From Thecamonas trahens ATCC 50062 (taxonomy: Eukaryota; Protista; Apusomonadida), in the NCBI RefSeq assembly GCF_000142905.1, contig NW_013657663.1, positions 248,001-312,000 of the forward strand: 64,000 bases of DNA, in the 5' to 3' direction. The position numbers were made by a program, and so were the translations under genes. Of the stretch, positions 1,279 to 12,550 are shown piece by piece. The notes under the pieces are model-generated. The model was not told the DNA's origin, ran no database searches, and was given only the letters and a program-made list of their open reading frames with translations. Each line of letters opens with the position of its first letter. Position 1 is the stretch's first letter.

Positions 1279-3567
1279 CTACGACCGCGTCCGGGCGGCA
1301 ACGCCAAACCGCTGCATGACCTCAAACAGGAGCTCGGGATTGTGCTTGAGCTCGGCAAATGACGGCTGCTGGCGGACAACCGGGAGATGAGCAACCATAA
1401 AGTCGAGGCAGAGCCGCTTGAGGCCGTCGGAGTGGTAGAGATCGGCGAGCATGAGGAGAAACACGACATTAGGGACGGAGATCGCGGTCCGCAGCGTGTC
1501 GATGCATAGCGCCTTGAGCCGCGGGAGCGCGTACTGCTCGGCCAGCGGAATGAGTTGCGCCGCAAGCTCGAACTGCCCGCGGAGCTGGACATGGTCGGTG
1601 TACATAAACTCGAGGAGTGGCGCAAAGACGGTCGGCTCGACCTCGGGCAGCTCGACAACCGACTCGAGCGACTCGCGCATTGGATTGCGGAACATGAGCC
1701 GGAAGGTCTCGGAGCGGGCGCAGAGGATGAGCTTGTGAGCCGGGACTGCGACGCGGGAGGCGCCGACCCGAAAGGTGACATCGGCTAGCTCGGGGCAGTT
1801 GAGAAACGCGCGCAGGTCCGAGTCGAGCGACGGCGGCGGGACAACGATGGGCTCGAGCGCAAGCTCGAGCAGGTCATTGCGAAAGTGCTTTCGCTTCTTG
1901 ATCGAGTCGTTGGCGTAGCCACCAAAAACGACAATGCGGTCGTTGCAGACAACGGCCGAGGCAAAAGAGCGGGCGCGCGGCTGGATGCCGCGGCACTCGA
2001 TCCGCCGCCACTCAAAGCGCCCGTTGGCCTGTGGCCGGAGCGCCACCCGCCAGACCACCCCGCGCTCGCCATGCTTGCCACCAAACACGTACATGTCGCC
2101 GTAGTGTGTCACAGCAACGTGACCCGACCGCAGCTCGGGTGGCTCGCCGTCAAACTCGAGCACCCGCCACGTCCGCGTTGCAAATTGGTACTGAAACAGG
2201 ATCGACGACGCCGAGAGCGCTCCGGTCTGACCGCCAAACACATACATCAAGCCCTCGTGGACCACAGCAGTGTGGCCCTTGAGCGCCTGCGGCGCGCCGT
2301 CGGCGCCCATCACGTCGGCGCCCGACGGCCGCCGCCGGTGGCGGGTCGGCTGCTGCCCAGCCGGCCGCGTCCGTAGAACCGGACTCTCAACCGCAGACAC
2401 TGCCCGCGGCGAGACTGCCGGCGAGAGCTGCAACACTGGCGGGACCGTCTCGGCAACAGTTTCCACACGCGACCACTCAAAGGTGACCAGCGAAAGTCGG
2501 TGGATCTGTGATGAGTGGTGCGTTCCGCAAAAGCCGCCAAACACATACATGGCCCGCTCCGGCTCGACCCCGCCATCGCCCACGGTCTGCCCGGCAGGCG
2601 GCCAGACCACCGCCGTGTGCGACCGCCGCCCAGCAGGCACAAGCCCGCTCACTTGCACGGGCACCCACTCGCACTCGTCAAAGTCGAACTTGAGAACGTC
2701 GTCGTAGTACGTCCCGCCGTGGCCCGAGTGTCCGCCAAACACGTACATCGCCCGCCCGCATCGCACCGCAGAGTGGTAGAACCGCGGTGCAGGGAGGTCG
2801 CCCCCGGGCTCAAGCTGCGTCCACACGTTCGAGTCAAAGTGAAAGACCCAGAGGTCGGCCAGCGTGCCTACCTCGGGATTGAACCCGCCAAACACGTACA
2901 TGCACCCATCAAACTCGATCGCGGTGTGTCCGTACCGCAGGACAGGCGTCTGCGGCTCAGCCGGCGACACAATCCGCCACACAAACGGATCATGCACCGC
3001 CGCTCCGGGCACCGACATGGCCATGCCACCGCCGCTAGGTCCACTCGATCGTGAGACCGCCAGCCGCGGTGAGGTCGCCGACCGCGGCGCCGCCGCTGTG
3101 GCCCCACCCGCTTGTGCTGTCACTGCACTCGCCACCGCCGCCGCTGCTGCCGCCGCTGCACTCACCAGCGACGGGCTCGGTGCCGCTGAGACTGACCGAT
3201 GCATCGTCGGGCTCGCCGACGATCCGTCCATCCTCGTCTCCGAGTCGGACGACGATCGGACTCGCCGTGGCCGGTTCGGCTGCGGCACCGCCAGCCGCTC
3301 TCCCGTCCCAGTCATCTGCTGTGACGAGCAATACGACGACGATGCATCCCGCGCCTGGTTGGTCCGGGAAGAGGTCGATGTTGATGACGACGAGGTTGAT
3401 GATGACGAGGTTGACGACGACGAGGTTGACGACGAGGACAGTGCTCGCCGAGGAGGGGAGGACGGCGACGACGAGGTGGTAGGTGCTGTACGTGGCAGGA
3501 TGGGCGACGAACCTGACGGCGTAGCCGACGACCCGTCCGCCGAGGCCTCCCCGGGTGGGTCTGACAT
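1279..3567 (-). CDS. Kelch-repeat + BTB/POZ protein (LZTR1-like architecture, probable CUL3 adaptor)
   Basis: Six kelch repeats (R.GH/HSA...MYVFGG), then a BTB domain (ADVTFRVG...AHKLILCARSETF...LLEFMYTD) and a BACK-like helix. Ser/Pro-rich N-terminus. Confidence 0.9.
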   Translation of the reverse strand: MSDPPGEASADGSSATPSGSSPILPRTAPTTSSSPSSPPRRALSSSSTSSSSTSSSSTSSSSTSTSSRTNQARDASSSYCSSQQMTGTGERLAVPQPNRPRRVRSSSDSETRMDGSSASPTMHRSVSAAPSPSLVSAAAAAAAAVASAVTAQAGGATAAAPRSATSPRLAVSRSSGPSGGGMAMSVPGAAVHDPFVWRIVSPAEPQTPVLRYGHTAIEFDGCMYVFGGFNPEVGTLADLWVFHFDSNVWTQLEPGGDLPAPRFYHSAVRCGRAMYVFGGHSGHGGTYYDDVLKFDFDECEWVPVQVSGLVPAGRRSHTAVVWPPAGQTVGDGGVEPERAMYVFGGFCGTHHSSQIHRLSLVTFEWSRVETVAETVPPVLQLSPAVSPRAVSAVESPVLRTRPAGQQPTRHRRRPSGADVMGADGAPQALKGHTAVVHEGLMYVFGGQTGALSASSILFQYQFATRTWRVLEFDGEPPELRSGHVAVTHYGDMYVFGGKHGERGVVWRVALRPQANGRFEWRRIECRGIQPRARSFASAVVCNDRIVVFGGYANDSIKKRKHFRNDLLELALEPIVVPPPSLDSDLRAFLNCPELADVTFRVGASRVAVPAHKLILCARSETFRLMFRNPMRESLESVVELPEVEPTVFAPLLEFMYTDHVQLRGQFELAAQLIPLAEQYALPRLKALCIDTLRTAISVPNVVFLLMLADLYHSDGLKRLCLDFMVAHLPVVRQQPSFAELKHNPELLFEVMQRFGVAARTRS

Positions 3568-3759
3568 AGGGGACGACGAATGGGGGTAAAGTGGTGAGTT
3601 GTGTGGCGTGAGTGCGACTCGGGAGTTTGCAGGTGGAAGGGGGAGGGGGGGGGGGGGGGGGGGGGACAGGGATGGTCACACACTTGACACCCACCCACCC
3701 CCCCCCCCCACCACACACACACACATACATACACACACGCGCACACACATTCAAACATC

Positions 3760-4504
3760 ATGTCGGGAGGTAGCACTATGGATAACTTTGTCAACGTCAA
3801 CATTGCCAAGGTACGGGTGTCGGCCGGGGGTCGGCTGGGTCGTCGTCGTCGTCTTGGCGCCAAGGGAAGCGAGGAGGGGGGGGGGGGGGGGGGGGGGGGT
3901 ATTGAAGACCACCTACACACACACTAGCACGACTCACACTCATTGACCGGCATTGCGCTCGCGGATGGAATGCTTGGCAACATGGACGGCGTGGGCACTC
4001 TCTCTTTGGGCTGATGAATGGGCGGGGGTTGGGTGCGCTGATCGGATATGGACCGGGCTGGCTGGCTTTGCCTTGCCTGTTGTCATGCCGGTGGTTGGAT
4101 GCGCATGGTAATGGTGCGGGTGCTTCTGATGGGACGGTCTGTGATCGCGTGTAGTTGACGTCGTTCCGTGGCGTCAAGGTTGATGGCACCGGGCCGTCTA
4201 TCCGTGTCCCGGGTACGTTCACGCTGTGTGTAAGAGATGAGGGGGAGAGGCGAGCGAGTGAGTTCTGACTGACACCGCATGTTGGGGCGAGAGGACAGGC
4301 ATCGGCGACATCTCGGCTGATGCGCTCGAGGAGGCTGGCATCATGACTCCGCTGCAGCTGCTGGGCCAGTATCTGGCGCTGGCAGACGAGGACGCGTTTG
4401 TGCAGTGGGCCACCGAGCTGGGCTGCATCGAGTGGCGGCTCCGCGACCCGACCAAGGGCACCGTCGTCGCACTTCGCCAGATCTGCGAGAAGCTGTTCTC
4501 CTGA
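3760..4504 (+). CDS. BANF1: Barrier-to-autointegration factor (BAF)-like protein, 3 exons: join(3760..3810,4155..4212,4299..4504), 104 aa; not in ORF track
   Basis: Spliced translation: MSGGSTMDNFVNVNIAK|LTSFRGVKVDGTGPSIRVPG|IGDISADALEEAGIMTPLQLLGQYLALADEDAFVQWATELGCIEWRLRDPTKGTVVALRQICEKLFS*. It matches the BAF pattern GIG...LEE.G...LGQ(F/Y)L.L..DE..F..W. Introns are GTACGG..TAG and GTACGT..CAG, phases are compatible, and a CTGAC branch-like site precedes the second acceptor. Confidence 0.8.
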
Positions 4505-4550
4505 GCGAGCATCAGCTACTTGGCACATGTAAACTCATCCATTCATCCCT

Positions 4551-7500
4551 TTACTCCTCACTCTCGCCCTTGACATACCCATCGCCGAGGTCGCCAGTCA
4601 CCAGCGACGCCACAGAGTTGGTCCGCGAGCCGCCAGCGGGTGGCAGTGTTGAGCCGATGTTCGTGGCGGCCTCGTTGGTCTCGCCGTCGTCAGCCTCAGC
4701 CTCGCCTCCCGATTTTGCCTTGACAGACCGCCGCCGGCGCGCCCGCTTCTTCCTCTTCCGCTTGCGCTTCTTGACCAAAGGCACGGTCCCATCGGCAGCA
4801 TTCTCGGCCCCAGACTCGGCCTTAGCCTCGTCCGCCCCAGACTCGGCCTCAGCCACAACCTCGCCCTCGGCCTCAGTCGCAGCTTCAGCCTCAGCCTCAG
4901 CCTCGACCTCGGGCACAAACGACTTGATGCGATACCGCACGGTCTTTCCGGTCATCCACGAGTAGTGGTTCGACCACTTGAACGAGTAAACGCCCGGAAC
5001 CGGCGCGACAAGCAGCGCATCGTAAACGACGTCGCCGCCGCCAGGCGCCGCGGGCACGCGCCGCAGCGGCACCACCGCCATGTCCTCAGTCAGCTCGGAC
5101 GAGCGCCAGTAGACGGCAAAGTCGATGTCGAGCGCTGCAAGGCTGAACGAATAGAGGAAGACTGTGTCAGCCACATCGACTGTGAAAGAGACGACGCCCG
5201 TGAGCCCAGCGTGGATGAGAAGCTCGCCCTCCGAGACAGTGCCTGGCAGCTCACGTGCCGGTTGCAGGCTCGGCTGCAGGTTGCGCGGCGAGAGGCTGGC
5301 CACGCCGGCAGCCAGCTCGGGCTTGGCAAGCAGGCCTGTCATCCGGGTGGCGTCGGCAGCCTCGACCGAGCTGGTCGCCAGGCTGGCAATTGCCGCTGCC
5401 ACCGCCTGCCGCACCCGCTCGCTAGGGTGCTCGACCGCAACGGTGAGCGCTGCCAGATACTTGGCCGCCAGGCTCGGCACGTCGGCCGACGCCACAGACA
5501 AGTTGCGCAGCAAGTCGGCAAAGGCAACCACGTCATCTTCGTCGTCCGAGTTGCTCAGTGCCACAAGCACTGCGTCCCACACCTTGACGGCCTCCGGCAC
5601 CGTCTCTAGCCGTCGCACCAGCTGCAGCCGCGCCGTGTCGACCGGCGCCTCGCCCTCCCGCCCGGCTCCGCCTACCATCCACAGCACGTTGCCTGCCAGC
5701 CCGCCGCAACCCGCCAGCGACCGCGGAACCACATGCACGCCCTCGTATTGGACACTTGTCCACTTGTCGGTGATGAGCTCGCAAAGCGCAAGGTCGCCGA
5801 GCTTGCGTCCTTCCGAATACAAAGTGGTAGCGTACGTCCGCCGCTGCTCCTCGGCGTCGGTACCGTCGTCAGCGGCGGCGGCGCTCTCGCCGGCCTCGTC
5901 GCGGCCGTCGGCGCGCGCCTCCCATGGCTTGTTGTCAAACGCGACCCGCTCCTCAGCAAGGAGCGACCAGCCGCCAAAAACGCCAAAGGCGTGCGGCCCA
6001 GTCCAGAACGCAGCATGCGCCGCCCGCGGCCGCCCGCTCTCGCCAAGCTTTGTCCACGTCCGGTGTCCAAGATCGAGCAGGTACGAATCGCCGTGCGTGG
6101 CAAGGGTAAAGCCGCCAGTGACAATGAGCTTCCGCCCAGAGCTTCCAGTCTCCAGGTGCGAGGCCTCCAGCGTGGCGTGGCCATCGCGGAGTGTCGGCCC
6201 GTTGCCGGTGATCATCGACAGCGCACTCCGCACGCGTCCATCGTCCTCGACGTCGAGCGCAAGGACCCACACGTCATTGTACTTGTATCCGTCGCAGTAG
6301 CCGCCGACAACGACAAGTGCGTCTGGATCGTGCAGCCCGGTGAGCGTGTGCCCGGTCCGCGGCGGCAGCGGCTTGCCCACACACTCCACCTCGCGCCACT
6401 CGCGAGTCACCGTGTCAAACGCGTGCAGGTAAGATGTCGGCGTCGAGGTCAGCGCGAGGCCGCCGTGGATGTACAGTGTGTGCCCGACCCGCGCCGCTGC
6501 ATGCCGTGTCCGCACCGCAGGCACAACACTCGACGACGCCGCAGCTTCGACGACCTCCCATGCCCCGCTCACCACATCGAGCGTCCGCAGCATGTTCGTT
6601 CTGCTCCCGTCGGCAAGCTCGCCGCCAAACACATACATCTTCGTCCCGACGAGCGTAACTGACGCACCGCGCGTCTCTCCAGCAGGGTCGGGCTCGACGC
6701 CGGCCGTCGCGTTGATCACGCCCGTCACGACGTGGCGGGCCGTCACCGCAACCATGCCGTCGAGCGCAGCGCGACGCACATGAGGTGGGCTCGCCAGCCG
6801 TGCCACTGCGCCCGCGAAAAACTCCAGCGCGTCCTGGGCTGCGCCCAGCGGCAGCGCCCCACCGCTCCGCACCATGCCGACAAGGCTCTCTACAGCCAGC
6901 GTGTGGAGCGGGTCGCCAGGCGCCGCAGAGTCGGCAAGCGCTGCTACCCGGAACGTTCCACCGGTCTCACACAAGACGCGCCAGACTGACGCATCGCGGG
7001 CGCAGAGCAGCAGCGCACGGAGGCCAACAATCTGCCACCGCCTCTCCTGCGAGTACACCAGCTGCTCGAGCAAAAAGTAGGTGCCACAGAGTAGTGCGAG
7101 TGAGTCATGCATCTTGACCTCGCTCACAAGCGGGGCCAGAGCCTCGCGCGCAGCCGAGCACACGCTTAGCGGCTCGGAGCTCGCCAGCTCGGCCATGCAC
7201 GACACAATCGAGACCAGAAACGGCGGCGGCGGCGGCTCGAGGCCAGCAAGCTGAGCGTCAATGTGCGCCCAGACGCCGGCTTCAAACTCGGCCCGATGAT
7301 GCATCTCCTTGCCAAGTTGCAGCACAAACGAGAGCCCGCCCACAGCCTGAACTCGTAGCTCATCGTCGAGCATGGGGTCAGAGGCGAAAGCCATGAGTGT
7401 GTTGGCCAGGTCGATTACCTTGTTGCGGAGGTCAGCAAAGTCGGCCGAGCTCAGCAGCTCGGTCGGATCTTCGACGTAGGAAGCATCCGTGGCTGAAGCC

Positions 7501-8075
7501 TCAGACGCGGCGATGACCTTGTCCAGCAGCGCCGTGACAACGTCGGCCGCCGCATACGCCAGCATCTTGAGGGCATAGACCTGGACGCCCGGACTGGCGT
7601 CCGAGGCCACTCGGCGGAGGCGGGAGACCGAGAAGACACGATACAAGATCTTGCGCGCATCCGCGGTCGAGGCCATGCCTACCAGCGCCAGTGCCGCAGC
7701 TTCGGCCGTCTCGGGCCCGGTCCGGCCATCAGGCTCGCACAGCGCCAGCAGGACGACCAGGTGGGCCGAGTCGAGCGCCGCCACAAACCGGGTGGCGAGC
7801 CACGGCAGCGCGGAGGCAATCAGCGCCAGAGCATGGAGTACTTGAGTGCTCTCAGCCTCGTCGACCTTGCCTTCGGCGCTGAGCACCGAATCCGCCAGTG
7901 CCTGCATCACCCCCACCACCGCAGCTTCGGCCACCGGCAGCTCGTCGCTCTTGGTCGCCCCACACCCGTCGAGAGCGTCGGCGAGGGCGTCGGCGGCCTT
8001 CGCCAGTCCGAGCTCGCGCGGAAGGCCTGCTGCCTCCAGGGCGGCTACTAGTGCTTGAGTTGTACTTGCTGCCAT
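4551..8075 (-). CDS. ARM/HEAT-like + Kelch + GOLD domain protein
   Basis: Ala/Leu-rich helical N-terminus; kelch repeats (MYVFGG, LYIHGG, VVVGG, IVTGG, VFGG, WMVGG); C-terminal GOLD (YSFSLAALDIDFAVY...PGVYSFKWSNHYSWMTGKTVRYRI); basic tail KKRKRKRKKRARRRR. First ATG at 8075. Confidence 0.82.
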   Translation of the reverse strand: MAASTTQALVAALEAAGLPRELGLAKAADALADALDGCGATKSDELPVAEAAVVGVMQALADSVLSAEGKVDEAESTQVLHALALIASALPWLATRFVAALDSAHLVVLLALCEPDGRTGPETAEAAALALVGMASTADARKILYRVFSVSRLRRVASDASPGVQVYALKMLAYAAADVVTALLDKVIAASEASATDASYVEDPTELLSSADFADLRNKVIDLANTLMAFASDPMLDDELRVQAVGGLSFVLQLGKEMHHRAEFEAGVWAHIDAQLAGLEPPPPPFLVSIVSCMAELASSEPLSVCSAAREALAPLVSEVKMHDSLALLCGTYFLLEQLVYSQERRWQIVGLRALLLCARDASVWRVLCETGGTFRVAALADSAAPGDPLHTLAVESLVGMVRSGGALPLGAAQDALEFFAGAVARLASPPHVRRAALDGMVAVTARHVVTGVINATAGVEPDPAGETRGASVTLVGTKMYVFGGELADGSRTNMLRTLDVVSGAWEVVEAAASSSVVPAVRTRHAAARVGHTLYIHGGLALTSTPTSYLHAFDTVTREWREVECVGKPLPPRTGHTLTGLHDPDALVVVGGYCDGYKYNDVWVLALDVEDDGRVRSALSMITGNGPTLRDGHATLEASHLETGSSGRKLIVTGGFTLATHGDSYLLDLGHRTWTKLGESGRPRAAHAAFWTGPHAFGVFGGWSLLAEERVAFDNKPWEARADGRDEAGESAAAADDGTDAEEQRRTYATTLYSEGRKLGDLALCELITDKWTSVQYEGVHVVPRSLAGCGGLAGNVLWMVGGAGREGEAPVDTARLQLVRRLETVPEAVKVWDAVLVALSNSDDEDDVVAFADLLRNLSVASADVPSLAAKYLAALTVAVEHPSERVRQAVAAAIASLATSSVEAADATRMTGLLAKPELAAGVASLSPRNLQPSLQPARELPGTVSEGELLIHAGLTGVVSFTVDVADTVFLYSFSLAALDIDFAVYWRSSELTEDMAVVPLRRVPAAPGGGDVVYDALLVAPVPGVYSFKWSNHYSWMTGKTVRYRIKSFVPEVEAEAEAEAATEAEGEVVAEAESGADEAKAESGAENAADGTVPLVKKRKRKRKKRARRRRSVKAKSGGEAEADDGETNEAATNIGSTLPPAGGSRTNSVASLVTGDLGDGYVKGESEE

Positions 8076-8245
8076 GGTGTCGTGCACGTGGGTGCGGCAA
8101 GGTGTCAAGTGTGGCCGGGTCTGGTCGCAAGGGGGGAGAGGGAGGGAGGGATCGAACGGGCAGCCGCAACTGACGAGTGTTGACGAGTTCAGGGCTCGGG
8201 GCTCGGGAGATTGCAGGATGTTCCATTTGTTTCAGTCTTGTACAT

Positions 8246-10911
8246 CTACATGCAGAGGAAAGATCCGCCGCGTGAAGACGAGGCGTGGCCGGAACCATCG
8301 TCGGCGTCGGGATCGCGCTCGTTGACCTCCTCCTGGAGAAGAGCCTCCTTGAACAGATCATAGCCGAGGTACCAGAGCATCATAGCCTTAGTCTTCCGCT
8401 TGTACTTGCGACGGATGGCGGGATCCTTGGAGAGCTGTAGGACGTCCATGAGATTCTCGTCGAGGAAGGTCCATAGGTGCTCGTCGGCAGAGCCGGACGA
8501 CTTGCGCTTCGAGTCAAGGACAAACATGTCGTGGAACTCTTCCATGAGGCGGTTGAGCGGAACCTTGCGGAGGACGGTGGGATGGAGCCAGTTGAGGAAC
8601 TGGACAAAGTCCTCCTGGAGCAGGTCCTTCTCGAGTGGGGCACTTGGGCTTGTGGGCGAGTTGTAGATGGGATGCAGGCGCCAACGGTAGAGGCGGAACT
8701 TGATGGTGCCCTTGCGAATGATGACGACGGCGCCGTGGTTCATCGACTTGTCGGTGTAGTTGGGCGCGGAGAAGACGGTGACAACACCAGGGAACTTATA
8801 CTCGGGCCCGTAGCGGTAGAGCTCGTAGCCGAGCTGCTTCTGCTCGTGGGCGCGGAAGATGGAGAGTAGCTTGTTGCGCTTGAGGAACGAGGCGACGGCC
8901 GGATAGCCAAACGACTTGAGGGTCGAGCCGCGGTCGCACGGGTGGAAGAAAGCGTCCGAGAACGACGACGGCGCCTGCTCCTTGCGGCGCTTGAGCTTTT
9001 TGAGATTCCATACGTGCGGGAGCGAGGCAAAGTCAGGCACCTCGTTGTCCTCGTACGGGTCAGTCCACAAGCAGTCCTTGAGCGGGCCGTACTTGGGCGG
9101 CTCGTTGAACCTGTTGATGGCCTCGATCTGGTCGAGCTTTTCGATGCGGTGCGAGAGGCCACCATGCATCATGAGGATGCGCTTGTCGGCAGTATGCACA
9201 AGAGCGTAGAGCGGCATGGCGTCAAAGCACGCCATGAGCTTGGTGTAGAATTTCTTGCCGTACTTGATGCGGCACTCCTCGAGCGTGCCCATTTTGCGGG
9301 TTGTCTTGCGGCTCTCGTGGTTGCCGCGAATGAGGTAGACCTTGTCCGGGTACTTGAGCTTGGCAGCGAGGAGGTAAAGAATGACTTCGCATGAAAAGTA
9401 GCCGCGGTCGACGTAGTCGCCGAGGAACAGATACGTGTACTTGCTCGAGATCTTGCCACCTGCCCGAAATATTTCCTCGAGGTCGAAGAACTGGCCGTGG
9501 ATGTCGCCGACGACCGTCATCGGCTCCCACAGCTCGAGCATGTTGGGCTCCTTGCGCATCAGGCCGCGCGCGCGGTCCACCAGCTCCAGCGCCACAACCT
9601 TGGACAACAACTCCTCCTTAAGAAACACGTCGTAGATCACCGAGAGCTTGGGCACGTCGTTTTCGTCAAACACGTCCTCGCGCGAGACAGAGAACTTGCC
9701 GGTGAGAAAGATGAAGAAGACCGGCCGCGAGCCGTCGATGCCGAGCTCGGCCAGGCTCGACGTGCCCTGCTTGGCGGTGTCGAGGTGGAAGCCCTCGTAG
9801 TAGAGCCGGTGCGCCGACGTGGCAAAGCCGGTCATCCGCGCCAGCCGCTGCAAGAGCATCATCAGCGTCGCCGACCGCGCAATATGCAGCTTGTAGCGGT
9901 GGCCGAGGTAGAAGGCCTGAATGCGGAGCTTAAAGTAGCCAATCTCGACGGACGAGCTCGACGATTCATCGGCCGACGATCGGCCCCACCCGGCGCCGGG
10001 CGACGGCTTACTTCTGCTCGTGCCCGATGACGAGCCCGAGTCGACGTCCGAGTCGGTGCTGTCCAGCTCACGCGACCGCCGCTTGGCCGCCGCCGACGCG
10101 GCCTCGAGCTCCTCCACCGAGTACATGTCACCGTCGTAGTTGAGGATGCGAGCAAATTCTGCAAACGAGACCTGCCCGTCGTGGTCGGTGTCGGCAGCCG
10201 CCAGCATCTTGCGCAGCTGCGGCGCAGACATCTTTTTGCCCAGATGTGCCATGACCTTGCCCAGCTCGCCCTCGTCGACAAAGCCTGAGTTGTCGTCGTC
10301 AAAACCTTAAAGGCATCGTACAGCTCCGAGAGGTGGGTCTTCTGCGTCTCGATCATCATCTGCACAAACTCGGAAAAGTTGATGAGGTTGTCCGAGTCCA
10401 TGTCTGCTGCGTCGAGCATGAGCTGCACATCGGCGGCCGAGTGGTCGGTCCCGAGCATCTCGAGCATCGACTTGAGCTCGCGCGCGTCAATGACTCCATC
10501 GCCGTCGCGGTCATACTGGTCAAACACCCGTCGGTACGACTTCATCCGCTTCCGCGGCACGTTGTACTTTTCGCGGATCTCATCGTCGGTCAGGTACATC
10601 TCCGACGGCGCTGTCGACGCTCCGCCACCGCTCCGCCGCTTGCGCTTCTGCTGAGACTTGGTGCTCGAGCTTGAGCTCGAGTCTGAGCTCGAGCCGGCCT
10701 TCATCGCCATGGCGGGCATCGGTCTCCTGCCCAAGCCCGAGCTGCTGCTCCCAGAGTAGCTACTGCCCGTCCTGCTACTGCCCGTCCCGCTGCTCCCAGT
10801 GCTACTACTTCCATACCCGCTACTTCCCGAGCTGCTTCCAGAACGAGAACTGCTCGAGTACCCAGAGCCACCACTCGAGCTTGATGACGATGATGAGCCC
10901 GAGGACGACAT
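8246..10911 (-). CDS. Calmodulin-like (4 EF-hand) + ubiquitin-like + calcineurin A (PP2B)-type phosphatase fusion; one-base frameshift at about 10301-10304
   Basis: ORFs 9862..10917 and 8246..10252 join if the T4 run is T5 (AFKVFDDDNSGFVDEGE). EF loops: DRDGDGVIDARE, DMDSDNLINFSE, DDDNSGFVDEGE, DTDHDGQVSFAE. PPP motifs: GDIHG, GDYVDRG, RGNHE, HGG, RAHE, FSAPNY, in calcineurin-like context (YLFLGDYVDRGYFS, FPGVVTVFSAPNY). Confidence 0.87.
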
Positions 10912-11048
10912 GAACAACTAGAGGTGGCTGTGGCAGGGGAGGGGGGGGGGGGGGGGAGGGAGTTACACTTGTCTTGGTGTAGTGGCTTGGTAGAGACGGT
11001 GGACAACTGAGACGAGGTTGTGTTGTGACGGTGAGGACTGCGGAGGAT

Positions 11049-12550
11049 ATGGAGTTTGACCTGCCTGTAGAGGCTGTGTGTGGGGGTGACGGAGTGGCGG
11101 TGTGGCAGGCCGACAGCCTCCCACACGACCGCCGTCATGCCTCGGTCCTTAAGGCTATTGTCGATGCCATGGGAGAGGCTTCTGCTGCGGTAAGTTGTTA
11201 GGGTGGGTGGTGGAGGATGGTAACGGGAGGGGAGAGGGAGAGGAGGGGGGAGGAGGGGGGGGGGGGCNNNNNNNNNNNNNNNNNNNNNNNNNNNNNNNNN
11301 NNNNNNNNNNNNNNNNNNNNNNNNNNNNNNNNNNNNNNNNNNNNNNNNNNNNNNNNNNNNNNNNNNNGGAGTTTTTTCCGTGACGGGCGGCGCTGTTGGT
11401 CGGGACGCTGTGCGCATGCTGCGGCCTGTTCATGGAAGTGTGGCGTTCACGTGCATCGTTGGGTTCGCGATTGTACGCTCAACTAGCCGGTCTTGCCAAT
11501 GCGTTGTAGGTGTCTTGCTCGGGATCTGACATCATAACGTGGATGCACGACGGGCGACGCAGGAGCCGGGGCATTTGTAATGACCACACTTTCCTTAAGG
11601 GGGGGGGGGGGGGGGAGTATCGGCAAGGGGCCTTGGACTGACCGAACCGACGATGCTCTCTGGCGGGTCAACGCTGCGCGGCGCGGCACGACCAACACGC
11701 GACCACGGCCGATTGGCGCGGCGTGCAGGCGCAAGGGCTCAATCATGTCATCACCAGCTACGACAAGCTAGCGACGTCGAGCCACACTCTCTACCTGTAC
11801 ATGCTGCCCGAGGAGCGGAGAGTGGCTGGCTTGCTCAAGGTCGGCCACAAGCGGCTGTTCATCATGGACGGTATCCGTGGGACCGTGGAGATGGAGCCAC
11901 TTTGTGCGCTCGATTTTTATGTCCACGAGTCGATGCAGCGACGTGGTATCGGTCTCGCGCTGTTCGAGACCATGCTCAGCGACTGCAGAGCAGTGCCGGC
12001 GCGGATGGGTTACGACCGCCCGTCTGACAAGTTCTTGTCGTTCCTGGCCAAGCATTACGGCCTGCGCTCGTACACGCCGCAGAGCAACAACTTTGTGGTC
12101 TTCCACGACTACTTTGACCCACCACGGACAGTAGCTGTGGCTAGTGCTGCCAACGCAGGCCCCTCCACCGGCTTGTACTCGGGTGAGCACGCCCCGTCGT
12201 CGCTCACGAGCTCCCACAGCACCGTGCTCCCAACAGCTTCGTACCAGCTGTACGGCGGCTCGGTGCCGCCTCCGTCGACCACCCCGTCGGCGTCAGCGTA
12301 CACGCCGCCGGCGTCGCCGCCGACGCCGCCACGGGCATCGACGGCCTGTGACGACCAAGAGTACGGGTACGCCGGTCATGCCTCGACGCCGACCGCGACA
12401 ACGCCATACACGGGCGAATATCACACTCCGTCGGCGTCAGCGGCCGACGGTCTGCACACACCTGCTGACGTATACTACACGCCATCGGCACGCACCCCGC
12501 GCCTGCGCCGTCATCGTCAGCCCGCGCCGCCTCGTATCGCTCGCAGATGA
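11049..12550 (+). CDS. ATAT1: Alpha-tubulin N-acetyltransferase (MEC-17/ATAT1), join(11049..11189,11729..12550)
   Basis: Exon 1 MEFDLPV...IVDAMGEASAA|GTAAGT splices in phase 0 to CAG|AQGLNHVITS. Motifs GLLKVGHKRLF, LCALDFYVHESMQRRGIG, YDRPSDKFLSFLAKHYGL, PQSNNFVVF. The exact C-terminus is uncertain: it could end near 12642 if a C is missing at about 12495. Confidence 0.93.
11268..11367. other. Assembly gap (100 N) inside the ATAT1 intron, next to a poly-G tract
   Basis: Run of 100 n's, probably a placeholder length. Confidence 0.99.

What the first reader, a model, noticed from the sequence alone, without database searches (positions are those of the whole stretch)
8246..10911. Possible self-contained calcineurin: calmodulin + ubiquitin-like domain + calcineurin A in one polypeptide
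Seen in sequence: one added T at about 10301-10304 gives one ORF of about 888 aa. It reads Ser-rich N-terminus, four canonical EF-hands spaced as in calmodulin, a Ser linker, a beta-grasp-like segment, then a complete PPP catalytic domain of calcineurin type. EF4, the UBL and the phosphatase are in one uninterrupted ORF even without the correction. The tail appears to keep degenerate calcineurin regulatory elements, compared with human CnA from memory: DFVQFLNWLHPTVLRKV vs the CnB-binding NFMDVFTWSLPFVGEKV; basic AIRRKYKRKTKAMMLW vs the CaM-binding helix; FKEALLQEEVNERDP vs the autoinhibitory FEEAKGLDRINERMP. Established: calcineurin normally needs separate CnB and calmodulin, and PPEF/RdgC phosphatases carry EF-hands C-terminally on a different catalytic clade. 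Inference: this may be an intramolecularly Ca2+-switched phosphatase, a phosphatase analogue of CDPKs. I do not know of this architecture being described.
Basis: partly seen in the sequence, partly recalled or inferred. Interest (0 to 1): 0.9.

Follow-up and report, generated by a model that had tools for sequence, protein, structure and literature searches.

The report
Calmodulin-fused calcineurin-type phosphatase of Thecamonas
One intact gene of the marine flagellate Thecamonas trahens, split in the assembly only by a one-base error, joins a calmodulin-like calcium sensor, a ubiquitin-like domain and a calcineurin-type phosphatase in one chain; it belongs to a small family that papers do not seem to describe and that may sense calcium without separate subunits.

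Summary
Contigs from four public runs, two of them environmental metagenomes, carry five A (five T on the coding strand) where the window has four at 10301-10304. The frameshift is therefore an assembly error, and the gene is one intronless ORF of 888 aa (10911 to 8246, minus strand).

The protein has a Ser-rich N-terminus, four canonical EF-hands closer to calmodulin than to calcineurin B, a ubiquitin-like domain, a PPP catalytic domain with all catalytic residues, and a conserved 135-aa tail.

- **Phylogeny:** the catalytic domain lies in the PP2B (calcineurin A) supergroup. It forms its own clade, separate from canonical CnA, PPEF and Bsu1-like EF-hand phosphatases.
- **Family size:** small, about a dozen 50% clusters among 1.84 billion proteins. 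It has six paralogs in T. trahens; the rest are mostly marine metagenome proteins. One member carries the calmodulin-like module at the C-terminus instead.
- **Canonical calcineurin:** T. trahens also has ordinary CnA and CnB.
- **Tail:** its similarity to CnA regulatory elements is not statistically significant. Two AlphaFold models nevertheless place the C-terminal acidic helix where the CnA autoinhibitory helix lies.

Two paralogs are in NCBI, one named "calcineurin subunit A". I found no paper describing the family. The scan noted the same architecture on two other pieces of this genome (s1-744754, s1-760480).

The parts
8246..10911 (-). Whole coding sequence. It is one ORF of 888 aa once the missing base is counted (ATG 10911-10909, stop 8248-8246), with no intron.
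   Evidence: ortholog P0001 is collinear
10301..10304 (-). T4 run that is T5 in the reads. This one-base assembly deletion splits the ORF inside EF-hand 3.
   Evidence: table 4 (extra A behind 10300 in X1, X2, X6) and table 7 (X4 loose end)
10612..10911 (-). Ser-rich N-terminus (48% Ser in the first 100 aa), followed by a basic stretch. The equivalent part of the ortholog is predicted disordered.
   Evidence: AF2 pLDDT about 30 for the equivalent part of P0001
10145..10587 (-). Calmodulin-like module with four canonical EF loops: 10477-10512, 10369-10404, 10265-10300 and 10157-10192.
   Evidence: Pfam; loops; PDB search of the ortholog's module gives CaM 83-96 bits and CnB 41 bits; AF2 shows four helix-loop-helix units
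9938..10144 (-). Linker made of one long helix followed by a Ser/Asp-rich disordered stretch.
   Evidence: AF2 helix 255-277, then pLDDT under 50 for 276-309 of P0001
9707..9937 (-). Ubiquitin-like (beta-grasp) domain. It has no C-terminal Gly-Gly, so it is a built-in domain and not a modifier.
   Evidence: profile A6 against PDB ubiquitin, E 1e-6 to 9e-5; Pfam PF00240 in paralogs and orthologs; AF2 beta-beta-alpha-beta-beta-beta pattern at pLDDT 93-97
8660..9682 (-). PPP catalytic domain of PP2B type with intact motifs: GDIHGQ 9491-9508, GDYVDRG 9401-9421, GNHE 9314-9325, HGG 9158-9166, RAHE 8843-8854, SAPNY 8756-8770. It carries a family-specific basic insert of about 23 aa (KKLKRRKE).
8522..8659 (-). 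First part of the tail: 'PLEKDLLQEDFVQFLNWLHPTVLRKV...' and the next helix. It is conserved across the family. Its resemblance to the CnA CnB-binding helix is ambiguous.
   Evidence: family alignment; hhalign register; no significant tail-only match; VIA alignments to CnA end at the start of this segment
8366..8422 (-). Basic amphipathic helix 'PAIRRKYKRKTKAMMLWYL', the candidate target of the calmodulin-like module.
   Evidence: conserved 'K..TKA...WY' in the family; AF2 helix 823-841 of P0001. Binding is inferred, not tested.
8309..8356 (-). Acidic C-terminal helix 'LFKEALLQEEVNERDP' with two Glu invariant in the family. It is the candidate autoinhibitory (pseudosubstrate) element.
   Evidence: invariant E853 and E857 (P0001 numbering); VIA-align puts this part of both AF2 models on the AID of 1aui, 4or9, 4ora and 4orb

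Best explanation
The locus is a functional, intronless gene of Thecamonas trahens for a single-chain, calcium-regulated phosphatase of the calcineurin (PP2B) lineage.

Shown:
- It is one ORF of 888 aa.
- It has four canonical calmodulin-type EF-hands.
- It has an integral ubiquitin-like domain.
- It has a complete PPP active site of PP2B affinity.
- It has a tail conserved in a small family. In that family the calmodulin-like module is at the N-terminus in most members, at the C-terminus in one, and apparently absent in others.

Inferred mechanism: at rest, the invariant acidic C-terminal helix lies in the catalytic groove, like the calcineurin autoinhibitory domain. When Ca2+ loads the fused calmodulin-like module, the module clamps the adjacent basic amphipathic helix within the same chain and pulls the inhibitory helix out. 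This is the logic of CDPKs applied to a phosphatase.

The ubiquitin-like domain is rigidly attached in front of the catalytic core. It probably serves as a docking surface or structural support; its role is unknown.
For: - Single ORF: reads and ortholog.
- EF module: CaM-like, with four canonical loops.
- Catalytic residues: invariant across the family.
- PP2B affinity: CnA 268 bits against at most 178 bits for other PPPs; PP2B supergroup at 98/96 and family clade at 100/99 in the tree; hhalign to a CnA profile gives E=9e-102.
- Autoinhibition: in two AF2 models, one built with a family-only alignment, the four autoinhibited calcineurin structures rank first. They score Z 48.3-49.1 against at most 46.8 for CnA chains lacking the AID. 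The aligned range runs to model residue about 862 and chain residues 475-495. Chains of PP1 and PP5 fused to a substrate peptide also align out to model residues 859-864.
- Conserved tail elements: the basic helix, and the acidic helix with two invariant Glu.
- Variable fusion: P0125 has UBL, catalytic domain and tail followed by a C-terminal four-EF module in one 777-aa ORF. Other members seem to lack the module (P0005, P0122, P0121). This pattern is expected if the module binds the phosphatase reversibly, as calmodulin does.
- pTM of 0.70 in both models, with 17-20% of residues disordered, hints that the EF module is placed against the core. This is weak evidence.
Against: - No experiment exists, and no contact map was available.
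- The tail has no statistically significant sequence similarity to the CnA regulatory region.
- AlphaFold has seen the autoinhibited calcineurin structures, so the docking of the helix may be partly memorised.
- pLDDT of the tail helices falls to 61-73 with the family-only alignment.
- T. trahens has CnB and free CaM-like proteins, so regulation in trans is not excluded.
- Expression of this paralog is not shown. Only contigs were laid, and their kind (DNA or RNA) is uncertain.
Confidence: 0.55

Rival explanations
1. The fused EF module plays the part of calcineurin B. It would be a permanently bound structural and Ca2+-sensing subunit on the first tail helix ('EDFVQFLNWLHP...'), while free calmodulin binds the basic helix in trans, as in ordinary calcineurin.
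For: Family members without a fused module keep the basic helix. T. trahens has CaM-like genes.
Against: The module scores twice as high to CaM as to CnB. The predicted helix is 13 residues long, is broken by Pro, and does not superpose on the BBH. The alignment to the engineered CaM-CnB-CnA chain 4il1 has rmsd 16-18 A, so the EF module is not at the CnB site in the models. The module can sit at either end of the chain (P0125).
Confidence: 0.15
2. The protein still needs separate CnB, and perhaps CaM as well. The fused EF module would serve another purpose, such as Ca2+-dependent targeting to substrates or membranes, and would not relieve autoinhibition.
For: Canonical CnB is encoded in the genome. 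Other PPPs carry EF-hands whose exact role is unclear (PPEF, EFPP; PMC8355824).
Against: The BBH is not recognisably conserved. The family is a separate clade with its own conserved tail. The fusion recurs at either terminus, which points to an interaction with the enzyme itself.
Confidence: 0.15
3. The gene is a decaying or non-catalytic paralog (a pseudophosphatase or pseudogene), and the frameshift is real.
For: The assembly shows a frameshift. One paralog (contig C3, L014) has a degenerate catalytic domain that Pfam does not detect.
Against: Contigs from four runs carry the extra base. All metal-binding and catalytic residues are intact. The ortholog is 67% identical over the full length without a break. 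The end branch in the tree is short, at 0.15.
Confidence: 0.03

Closest known systems
Calcineurin (PP2B/PPP3): CnA catalytic subunit with CnB and calmodulin
   Same: The catalytic domain is nearest to CnA (37-42% identity; Z 49, rmsd 1.7-2.7 A over 340-355 residues). It lies in the same supergroup in the tree. A C-terminal helix is modelled in the AID position. The Ca2+ sensor is calmodulin-like.
   Different: It forms a separate clade (100/99), not canonical CnA. T. trahens has its own canonical CnA (contig C36) and CnB. The sensor is fused in cis. A ubiquitin-like domain precedes the catalytic core. The CnB-binding helix is not recognisably kept. The basic helix abuts the inhibitory helix instead of lying about 50 residues away. 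There is a basic insert in the catalytic domain.
Engineered CaM-CnB-CnA single-chain calcineurin (PDB 4il1)
   Same: Calmodulin and a calcineurin catalytic subunit are in one polypeptide, with the sensor N-terminal. It is the top PDB hit of the EF module.
   Different: It is artificial and contains CnB. The relative placement of the modules differs from the models here (rmsd 16-18 A).
CDPKs (calmodulin-like-domain protein kinases of plants and alveolates)
   Same: Working logic only: a catalytic domain, an autoinhibitory segment next to a helix that a fused calmodulin-like domain binds in cis.
   Different: CDPKs are kinases, not phosphatases, and there is no homology outside the EF-hands. The mechanism here is inferred, not shown.
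PPEF/RdgC phosphatases
   Same: A PPP catalytic domain with EF-hands in the same chain.
   Different: In PPEF the EF-hands are C-terminal and the N-terminal region is PPP5-like. It is a different catalytic clade: the T. trahens PPEF (contig C44, XP_013754939.1) groups with an oomycete PPEF at 97/81, outside the PP2B supergroup.
EFPP/PPP8 of Apicomplexa, and Bsu1-like PPPs with EF hands (Kerk et al. 2021, PMC8249667)
   Same: N-terminal EF-hands in front of a PPP catalytic domain.
   Different: EFPP is described as apicomplexan-specific, very long, and mutated in catalytic residues (PMC8355824). None of the family-level hits is apicomplexan. The Bsu1-like T. trahens protein (XP_013758396.1, contig C20) falls outside the PP2B supergroup. 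No EFPP sequence was on hand, so EFPP was not placed in the tree.
UBLCP1 (ubiquitin-like domain plus CTD-type phosphatase)
   Same: A ubiquitin-like domain fused N-terminally to a protein phosphatase. This is from my own knowledge and was not tested here.
   Different: Its catalytic fold is unrelated (HAD/FCP), and it has no Ca2+ sensor.

Membership tests
PPP superfamily (Metallophos, PF00149) | Motifs GDxHG, GDxVDRG, GNHE, HGG, RxHE and SAPNY, with all metal ligands | tested here: met
   Pfam 5.8e-31; motifs located; invariant across the family
PP2B / calcineurin A | The catalytic domain groups with CnA to the exclusion of PP1, PP2A/4/6, PP5 and PPEF | tested here: met
   PDB scores of 268 against at most 178 bits. 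The PP2B supergroup is supported at 98/96 in the tree. However, the family is its own clade (100/99) beside the canonical CnA group, not inside it.
PP2B / calcineurin A | CnB-binding helix directly after the catalytic domain | tested here: inconclusive
   BLAST of the tail against the T. trahens CnA tail gives E=10. Tail-only hhalign finds nothing there. Full-length hhalign runs into the region in a different register. The AF2 helix is short and not superposed on the BBH.
PP2B / calcineurin A | C-terminal autoinhibitory helix occupying the active-site groove | tested here: inconclusive
   Sequence: the best tail-only hhalign match is the AID, but at E=0.43, with the reversed control at 0.23. 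Structure prediction: AID-containing calcineurin chains rank first, with the aligned range reaching the AID, in two models.
PP2B / calcineurin A | Obligate heterodimer with CnB, activated by free Ca2+/calmodulin | not testable with these tools
Biochemistry is needed.
Calmodulin-like EF-hand domain | Four canonical 12-residue loops at calmodulin spacing, with best matches to CaM | tested here: met
   Loops at aa 134, 170, 205 and 241; CaM 83-96 bits, CnB 41 bits
Ubiquitin-like (beta-grasp) domain | Profile similarity to ubiquitin, and the beta-grasp order of secondary structure | tested here: met
   Profile A6 against ubiquitin chains, E 1e-6 to 9e-5 over ubiquitin residues 10-71; PF00240 in relatives; AF2. 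Pfam alone did not report it for the window copy.
PPEF/RdgC | PPEF catalytic clade with C-terminal EF-hands | tested here: not met
   The EF-hands are N-terminal, and the PPEF clade is separate in the tree
Bsu1-like PPP with EF hands (Kerk et al. 2021) | Groups with the T. trahens representative XP_013758396.1 | tested here: not met
   That protein is the contig C20 locus, and it lies outside the PP2B supergroup
EFPP/PPP8 (Apicomplexa) | Orthology to apicomplexan EFPP; degenerate catalytic residues | not tested
   No EFPP sequence was available by reference. Indirectly, the catalytic residues are intact here, and none of the roughly 12 family-level clusters carries an apicomplexan name.

The most novel reading that the evidence does not exclude
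This would be a natural, self-contained calcineurin: a PP2B-type phosphatase that needs neither CnB nor free calmodulin, because a fused calmodulin-like domain releases a C-terminal pseudosubstrate helix in cis. It would be the phosphatase counterpart of CDPKs. The built-in ubiquitin-like domain would take over a scaffolding or targeting role. The family would have arisen in apusomonads and related marine protists, with the sensor fused independently at either end.
Probability: 0.4. Interest if true: 0.75.

Novelty: new variant of a known kind. Interest (0 to 1): 0.62.

Why it matters
Calcineurin is the textbook case of a phosphatase that needs two separate calcium sensors. A natural single-chain version would show that the kinase solution (CDPK) was also reached on the phosphatase side. 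It would give a minimal system for studying how calmodulin-type modules release autoinhibition in PP2B enzymes. It could also serve as a compact, genetically encoded Ca2+-switched phosphatase that immunophilin drugs, which act through CnB, should not affect. In addition, it adds a lineage-specific expansion (six paralogs) to the signalling repertoire of apusomonads, which are close relatives of animals and fungi. Finally, it corrects a broken spot in the public assembly.

Tried and rejected
There is no verdict on binding.
- **The search for homologous proteins with the tail alone**: found only the query itself, which is uninformative given the word index.
- **First tree** of 143 rows with the mixture model: did not finish in two runs. 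It was replaced by 75 rows under LG+G4 with a careful search. Left out were two thirds of the unnamed PP2B-like representatives and the partial P0004.
- **Exact look-up** of the window's two ORF products in the protein collection: not present. How the public annotation treats this locus remains unknown.
- **ESM Atlas**: only scores below 0.9, to assorted EF-hand plus Metallophos clusters (haptophytes, oomycetes, giant viruses, PPEF). These are leads only.
- **Literature searches**: no description of an EF-hand, UBL and PP2B architecture. This is absence within an open-access library, not proof.
- **Pseudogene or two-gene reading:** rejected on the reads.
not confirmed as homology.
- **RNA evidence:** three metatranscriptome runs hold small shares of the stretch.
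Full report
**What is in the sequence**

On the minus strand, an ORF of 351 aa (9862..10917) and an ORF of 668 aa (8246..10252) overlap in different frames.
- The first frame makes sense only up to '...THLSELYDAFKV'.
- The second frame, read upstream of its first ATG, begins 'FDDDNSGFVDEGELGKVMAHLGKK'.
- The switch lies in a run of four T at 10301-10304, in the middle of an EF-hand.
- Pfam finds EF-hands in both pieces and a Metallophos domain (E=5.8e-31) in the second.

**The frameshift is an assembly error**

I laid contigs of four public runs on 8100-11000.
- Three contigs bridge the site and carry one extra A behind + strand position 10300: X1 (a marine metagenome), and X2 and X6 (runs labelled with the organism, from 2010 and 2020).
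- The contig of X4 (an estuary metagenome) begins at 10301 with a loose end GTCGTCGTCA, which also gives five A.
- No joint was reported inside the gene, so there is no sign of an intron.
- With that base added, the CDS is 2667 nt and 888 aa with one terminal stop.
- These are contigs, not raw reads, and their depth is low (3-8). But they come from at least three independent samples and agree with the ortholog.

**Organism and relatives**

Earlier notes of this scan name the genome Thecamonas trahens. I confirmed this: the paralog P0002 is XP_013760814.1 of T. trahens ATCC 50062, on a contig of 584,593 bp, the length of contig C9 of the window's assembly.

The best hit of the 668-aa piece is P0001.
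- It is an 888-aa protein found as an unbroken ORF in three marine metagenome assemblies, one of them from Tara Oceans.
- It is 67% identical over residues 92-883 of the corrected protein.
- It reads 'LYEAFKVFDDDDSGFVDEEELGKVM' across the site.

All other strong hits are calcineurin A, at 37-43% identity over the catalytic domain only.

**A family, expanded in T. trahens**

A six-frame search of the assembly finds the window gene plus five further loci that share the UBL, the catalytic domain and the tail:

| Locus | Notes |
|---|---|
| C9 | P0002; EF-hands present |
| C6 | EF, ubiquitin and Metallophos; annotated by NCBI as 'calcineurin subunit A', XP_013761524.1, 777 aa; its frame also breaks in this assembly relative to P0008 |
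| C5 | EF-hands; a low-complexity insert of about 400 aa in a catalytic loop |
| C29 | Ubiquitin and catalytic domains; no EF-hand detected |
| C3 | EF-hands; catalytic domain too degenerate for Pfam |

The same genome also has:
- a canonical CnA (C36) with a textbook CnB-binding helix, CaM-binding region and AID;
- a second CnA-like gene (C52);
- a canonical CnB, at 195 bits to human CnB;
- a PPEF (C44) and an N-terminal EF-hand PPP (C20).

The last two are the T. trahens sequences listed by Kerk et al. 2021 (PMC8249667) as PPEF and as 'Bsu1 with EF hands'. That survey does not list the present family.

**How large is the family?**

I searched a profile of nine members against 1.84 billion representative proteins. 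There is a clear step in the scores.
- Twelve true members score 424-1014 bits.
- After them, a plateau of calcineurin-like proteins begins at about 380 bits.
- Two high scorers are artefacts with doubled catalytic domains: a sandfly CnA and an oomycete PPEF-type model.

The true members come from JGI, ENA and Logan metagenomes, from T. trahens, and from one EukProt transcriptome (P0124, a complete ORF with EF-hands and a catalytic domain).

Architectures vary.
- N-terminal EF module: the window gene, P0001, P0002, P0123, P0124, P0127, C5 and C6.
- No EF module seen: P0005, P0122, P0003 and P0121. For P0121, the frame upstream of the called start stays open to the contig end, so this case is uncertain.
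- C-terminal module: in P0125 a four-EF calmodulin-like module follows the tail, within one 777-aa ORF.

**Domain identities**

- *EF module.* The ortholog's module matches calmodulins at 83-96 bits, and the CnB part of the engineered chain 4il1 at 41 bits. The window's four loops (DRDGDGVIDARE, DMDSDNLINFSE, DDDNSGFVDEGE, DTDHDGQVSFAE) are canonical and spaced 36/35/36.
- *UBL.* A six-sequence profile that includes the window copy hits ubiquitin chains at E of 1e-6 to 9e-5 over ubiquitin residues 10-71. AF2 gives a beta-grasp pattern at pLDDT 93-97.
- *Catalytic domain, scores.* Against the PDB, CnA scores 268 bits, PP2A 178, PP5 172 and PP1 164.
- *Catalytic domain, tree.* The maximum-likelihood tree has 75 catalytic domains and 327 columns (LG+G4, careful search). 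It puts the 16 family rows in one clade (100/99). That clade sits inside a PP2B supergroup (98/96), together with the canonical CnA group and a second CnA-like group. The PPEF group (100/99 with a PP5-like row) and the C20 Bsu1-like protein lie outside.
- *Limits of the tree.* The order of branching inside the supergroup is unresolved. The root is on T. trahens PP1/PP2A-like rows. Two thirds of the unnamed representatives were left out to make the search finish.

**The tail**

The family tail is conserved: 'PFEKD..EDFvQFLN', 'W.FL..NL', a basic helix 'K..TKA...WY', then 'G.D.F..AL..E...E' with two invariant Glu.

- BLAST of the window tail against the tail of the organism's own CnA gives E=10.
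A reversed control gives 0.23.
- The full-length profile comparison (E=9e-102) runs a little past the catalytic domain.

**Structure prediction**

I built two AF2 models of P0001.
- One used 82 sequences including CnAs: pLDDT 80.2, pTM 0.70.
- One used the 15 family sequences only: pLDDT 75.4, pTM 0.70.

Both give the same secondary structure: four EF-hands, the beta-grasp domain, the PPP core, and tail helices at 758-770, 780-791, 803/805-820, 823-841 and 845-856.

VIA-align gives the same picture for both models.
- The four crystal structures of autoinhibited calcineurin that contain the AID (1aui, 4or9, 4ora, 4orb) rank first: Z 48.3-49.1, with 340-355 residues aligned at 1.7-2.7 A. The aligned range reaches model residue 861-862 and chain residues 475-495.
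- CnA chains without the AID score at most 46.8, and their alignments stop at model residues 748-761.
- PP1 and PP5 chains fused to substrate peptides also align out to residues 859-864.

I read this as the C-terminal acidic helix being modelled in the substrate and AID groove. The tool reports only ranges, not residue pairs, and AlphaFold was trained on these structures, so this is supportive and not decisive. The first tail helix does not follow the CnA CnB-binding helix. The EF module is not at the CnB position (rmsd 16-18 A to 4il1).

**Mechanism**

The best-supported reading is a cis-regulated, Ca2+-switched phosphatase. It rests on four observations:
- a calmodulin-type sensor in the same chain;
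- a basic amphipathic helix directly in front of an invariant acidic helix;
- the modelled position of that acidic helix;
- the fact that the sensor can be N-terminal, C-terminal or absent across the family.

The steps 'sensor binds the basic helix' and 'binding releases inhibition' are inferences. Rival readings, in which the module acts as CnB or the enzyme needs subunits in trans, remain open.

**Novelty**

The idea of EF-hands fused to a PPP is known: PPEF, apicomplexan EFPP, and Bsu1-like forms. Two T. trahens paralogs with this exact architecture sit in public databases under automatic names.

I found no paper describing a calmodulin-like module and a ubiquitin-like domain fused to a calcineurin-type catalytic domain. 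The searched library covers only open-access papers and bioRxiv preprints.

I class it as a new variant of a known kind.

The scan's first readers noted the same architecture on two other pieces of this genome (s1-744754, s1-760480). Those are paralogs and had not been followed up.

Noticed in passing
window 8130: Contigs of X1 and X2 carry an extra G behind position 8130. This is a second single-base assembly error, in the spacer between this gene's stop (8246) and the start of the neighbouring 1185-aa ORF (4551..8108, minus strand).
   Followed up: no
L013 (G000:C6:76000-85000), about 5226-5631: The C6 paralog also changes frame in this assembly inside the catalytic-domain insert. The metagenome protein P0008 and the NCBI model XP_013761524.1 read through. 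This is either another assembly indel or an intron handled by the annotators.
   Followed up: partly
P0125 (NCBI GCA_041445565.1, contig of 3693 nt, gene 1334-3667): A family member with the four-EF calmodulin-like module at the C-terminus, after the tail and an acidic/Ser linker. It mirrors the window protein's order.
   Followed up: partly
L011 (C29) and L012 (C5), catalytic-domain insert: Two paralogs carry low-complexity inserts of 300-400 aa (Lys-rich, or Asp-Ser/Pro-Asp repeats) at the same loop where the window protein has its 23-aa basic insert (KKLKRRKE).
   Followed up: no
L014 (G000:C3:622000-631999), frame 2292-6812 +: A 1507-aa open frame with EF-hands and a family-type catalytic domain that Pfam no longer detects. 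It has a long branch (1.4) in the tree and may be a pseudophosphatase member of the family.
   Followed up: no
window 11267-11420 (approx.): A run of N (assembly gap) about 350 bp upstream of the gene's start, within a pyrimidine-rich, low-complexity stretch.
   Followed up: no
L029 (G000:C20) and L030 (G000:C44): T. trahens also encodes a Bsu1-like PPP with an N-terminal EF-hand (XP_013758396.1) and a PPEF (XP_013754939.1). At least three different PPP lineages in this organism therefore carry EF-hands.
   Followed up: partly
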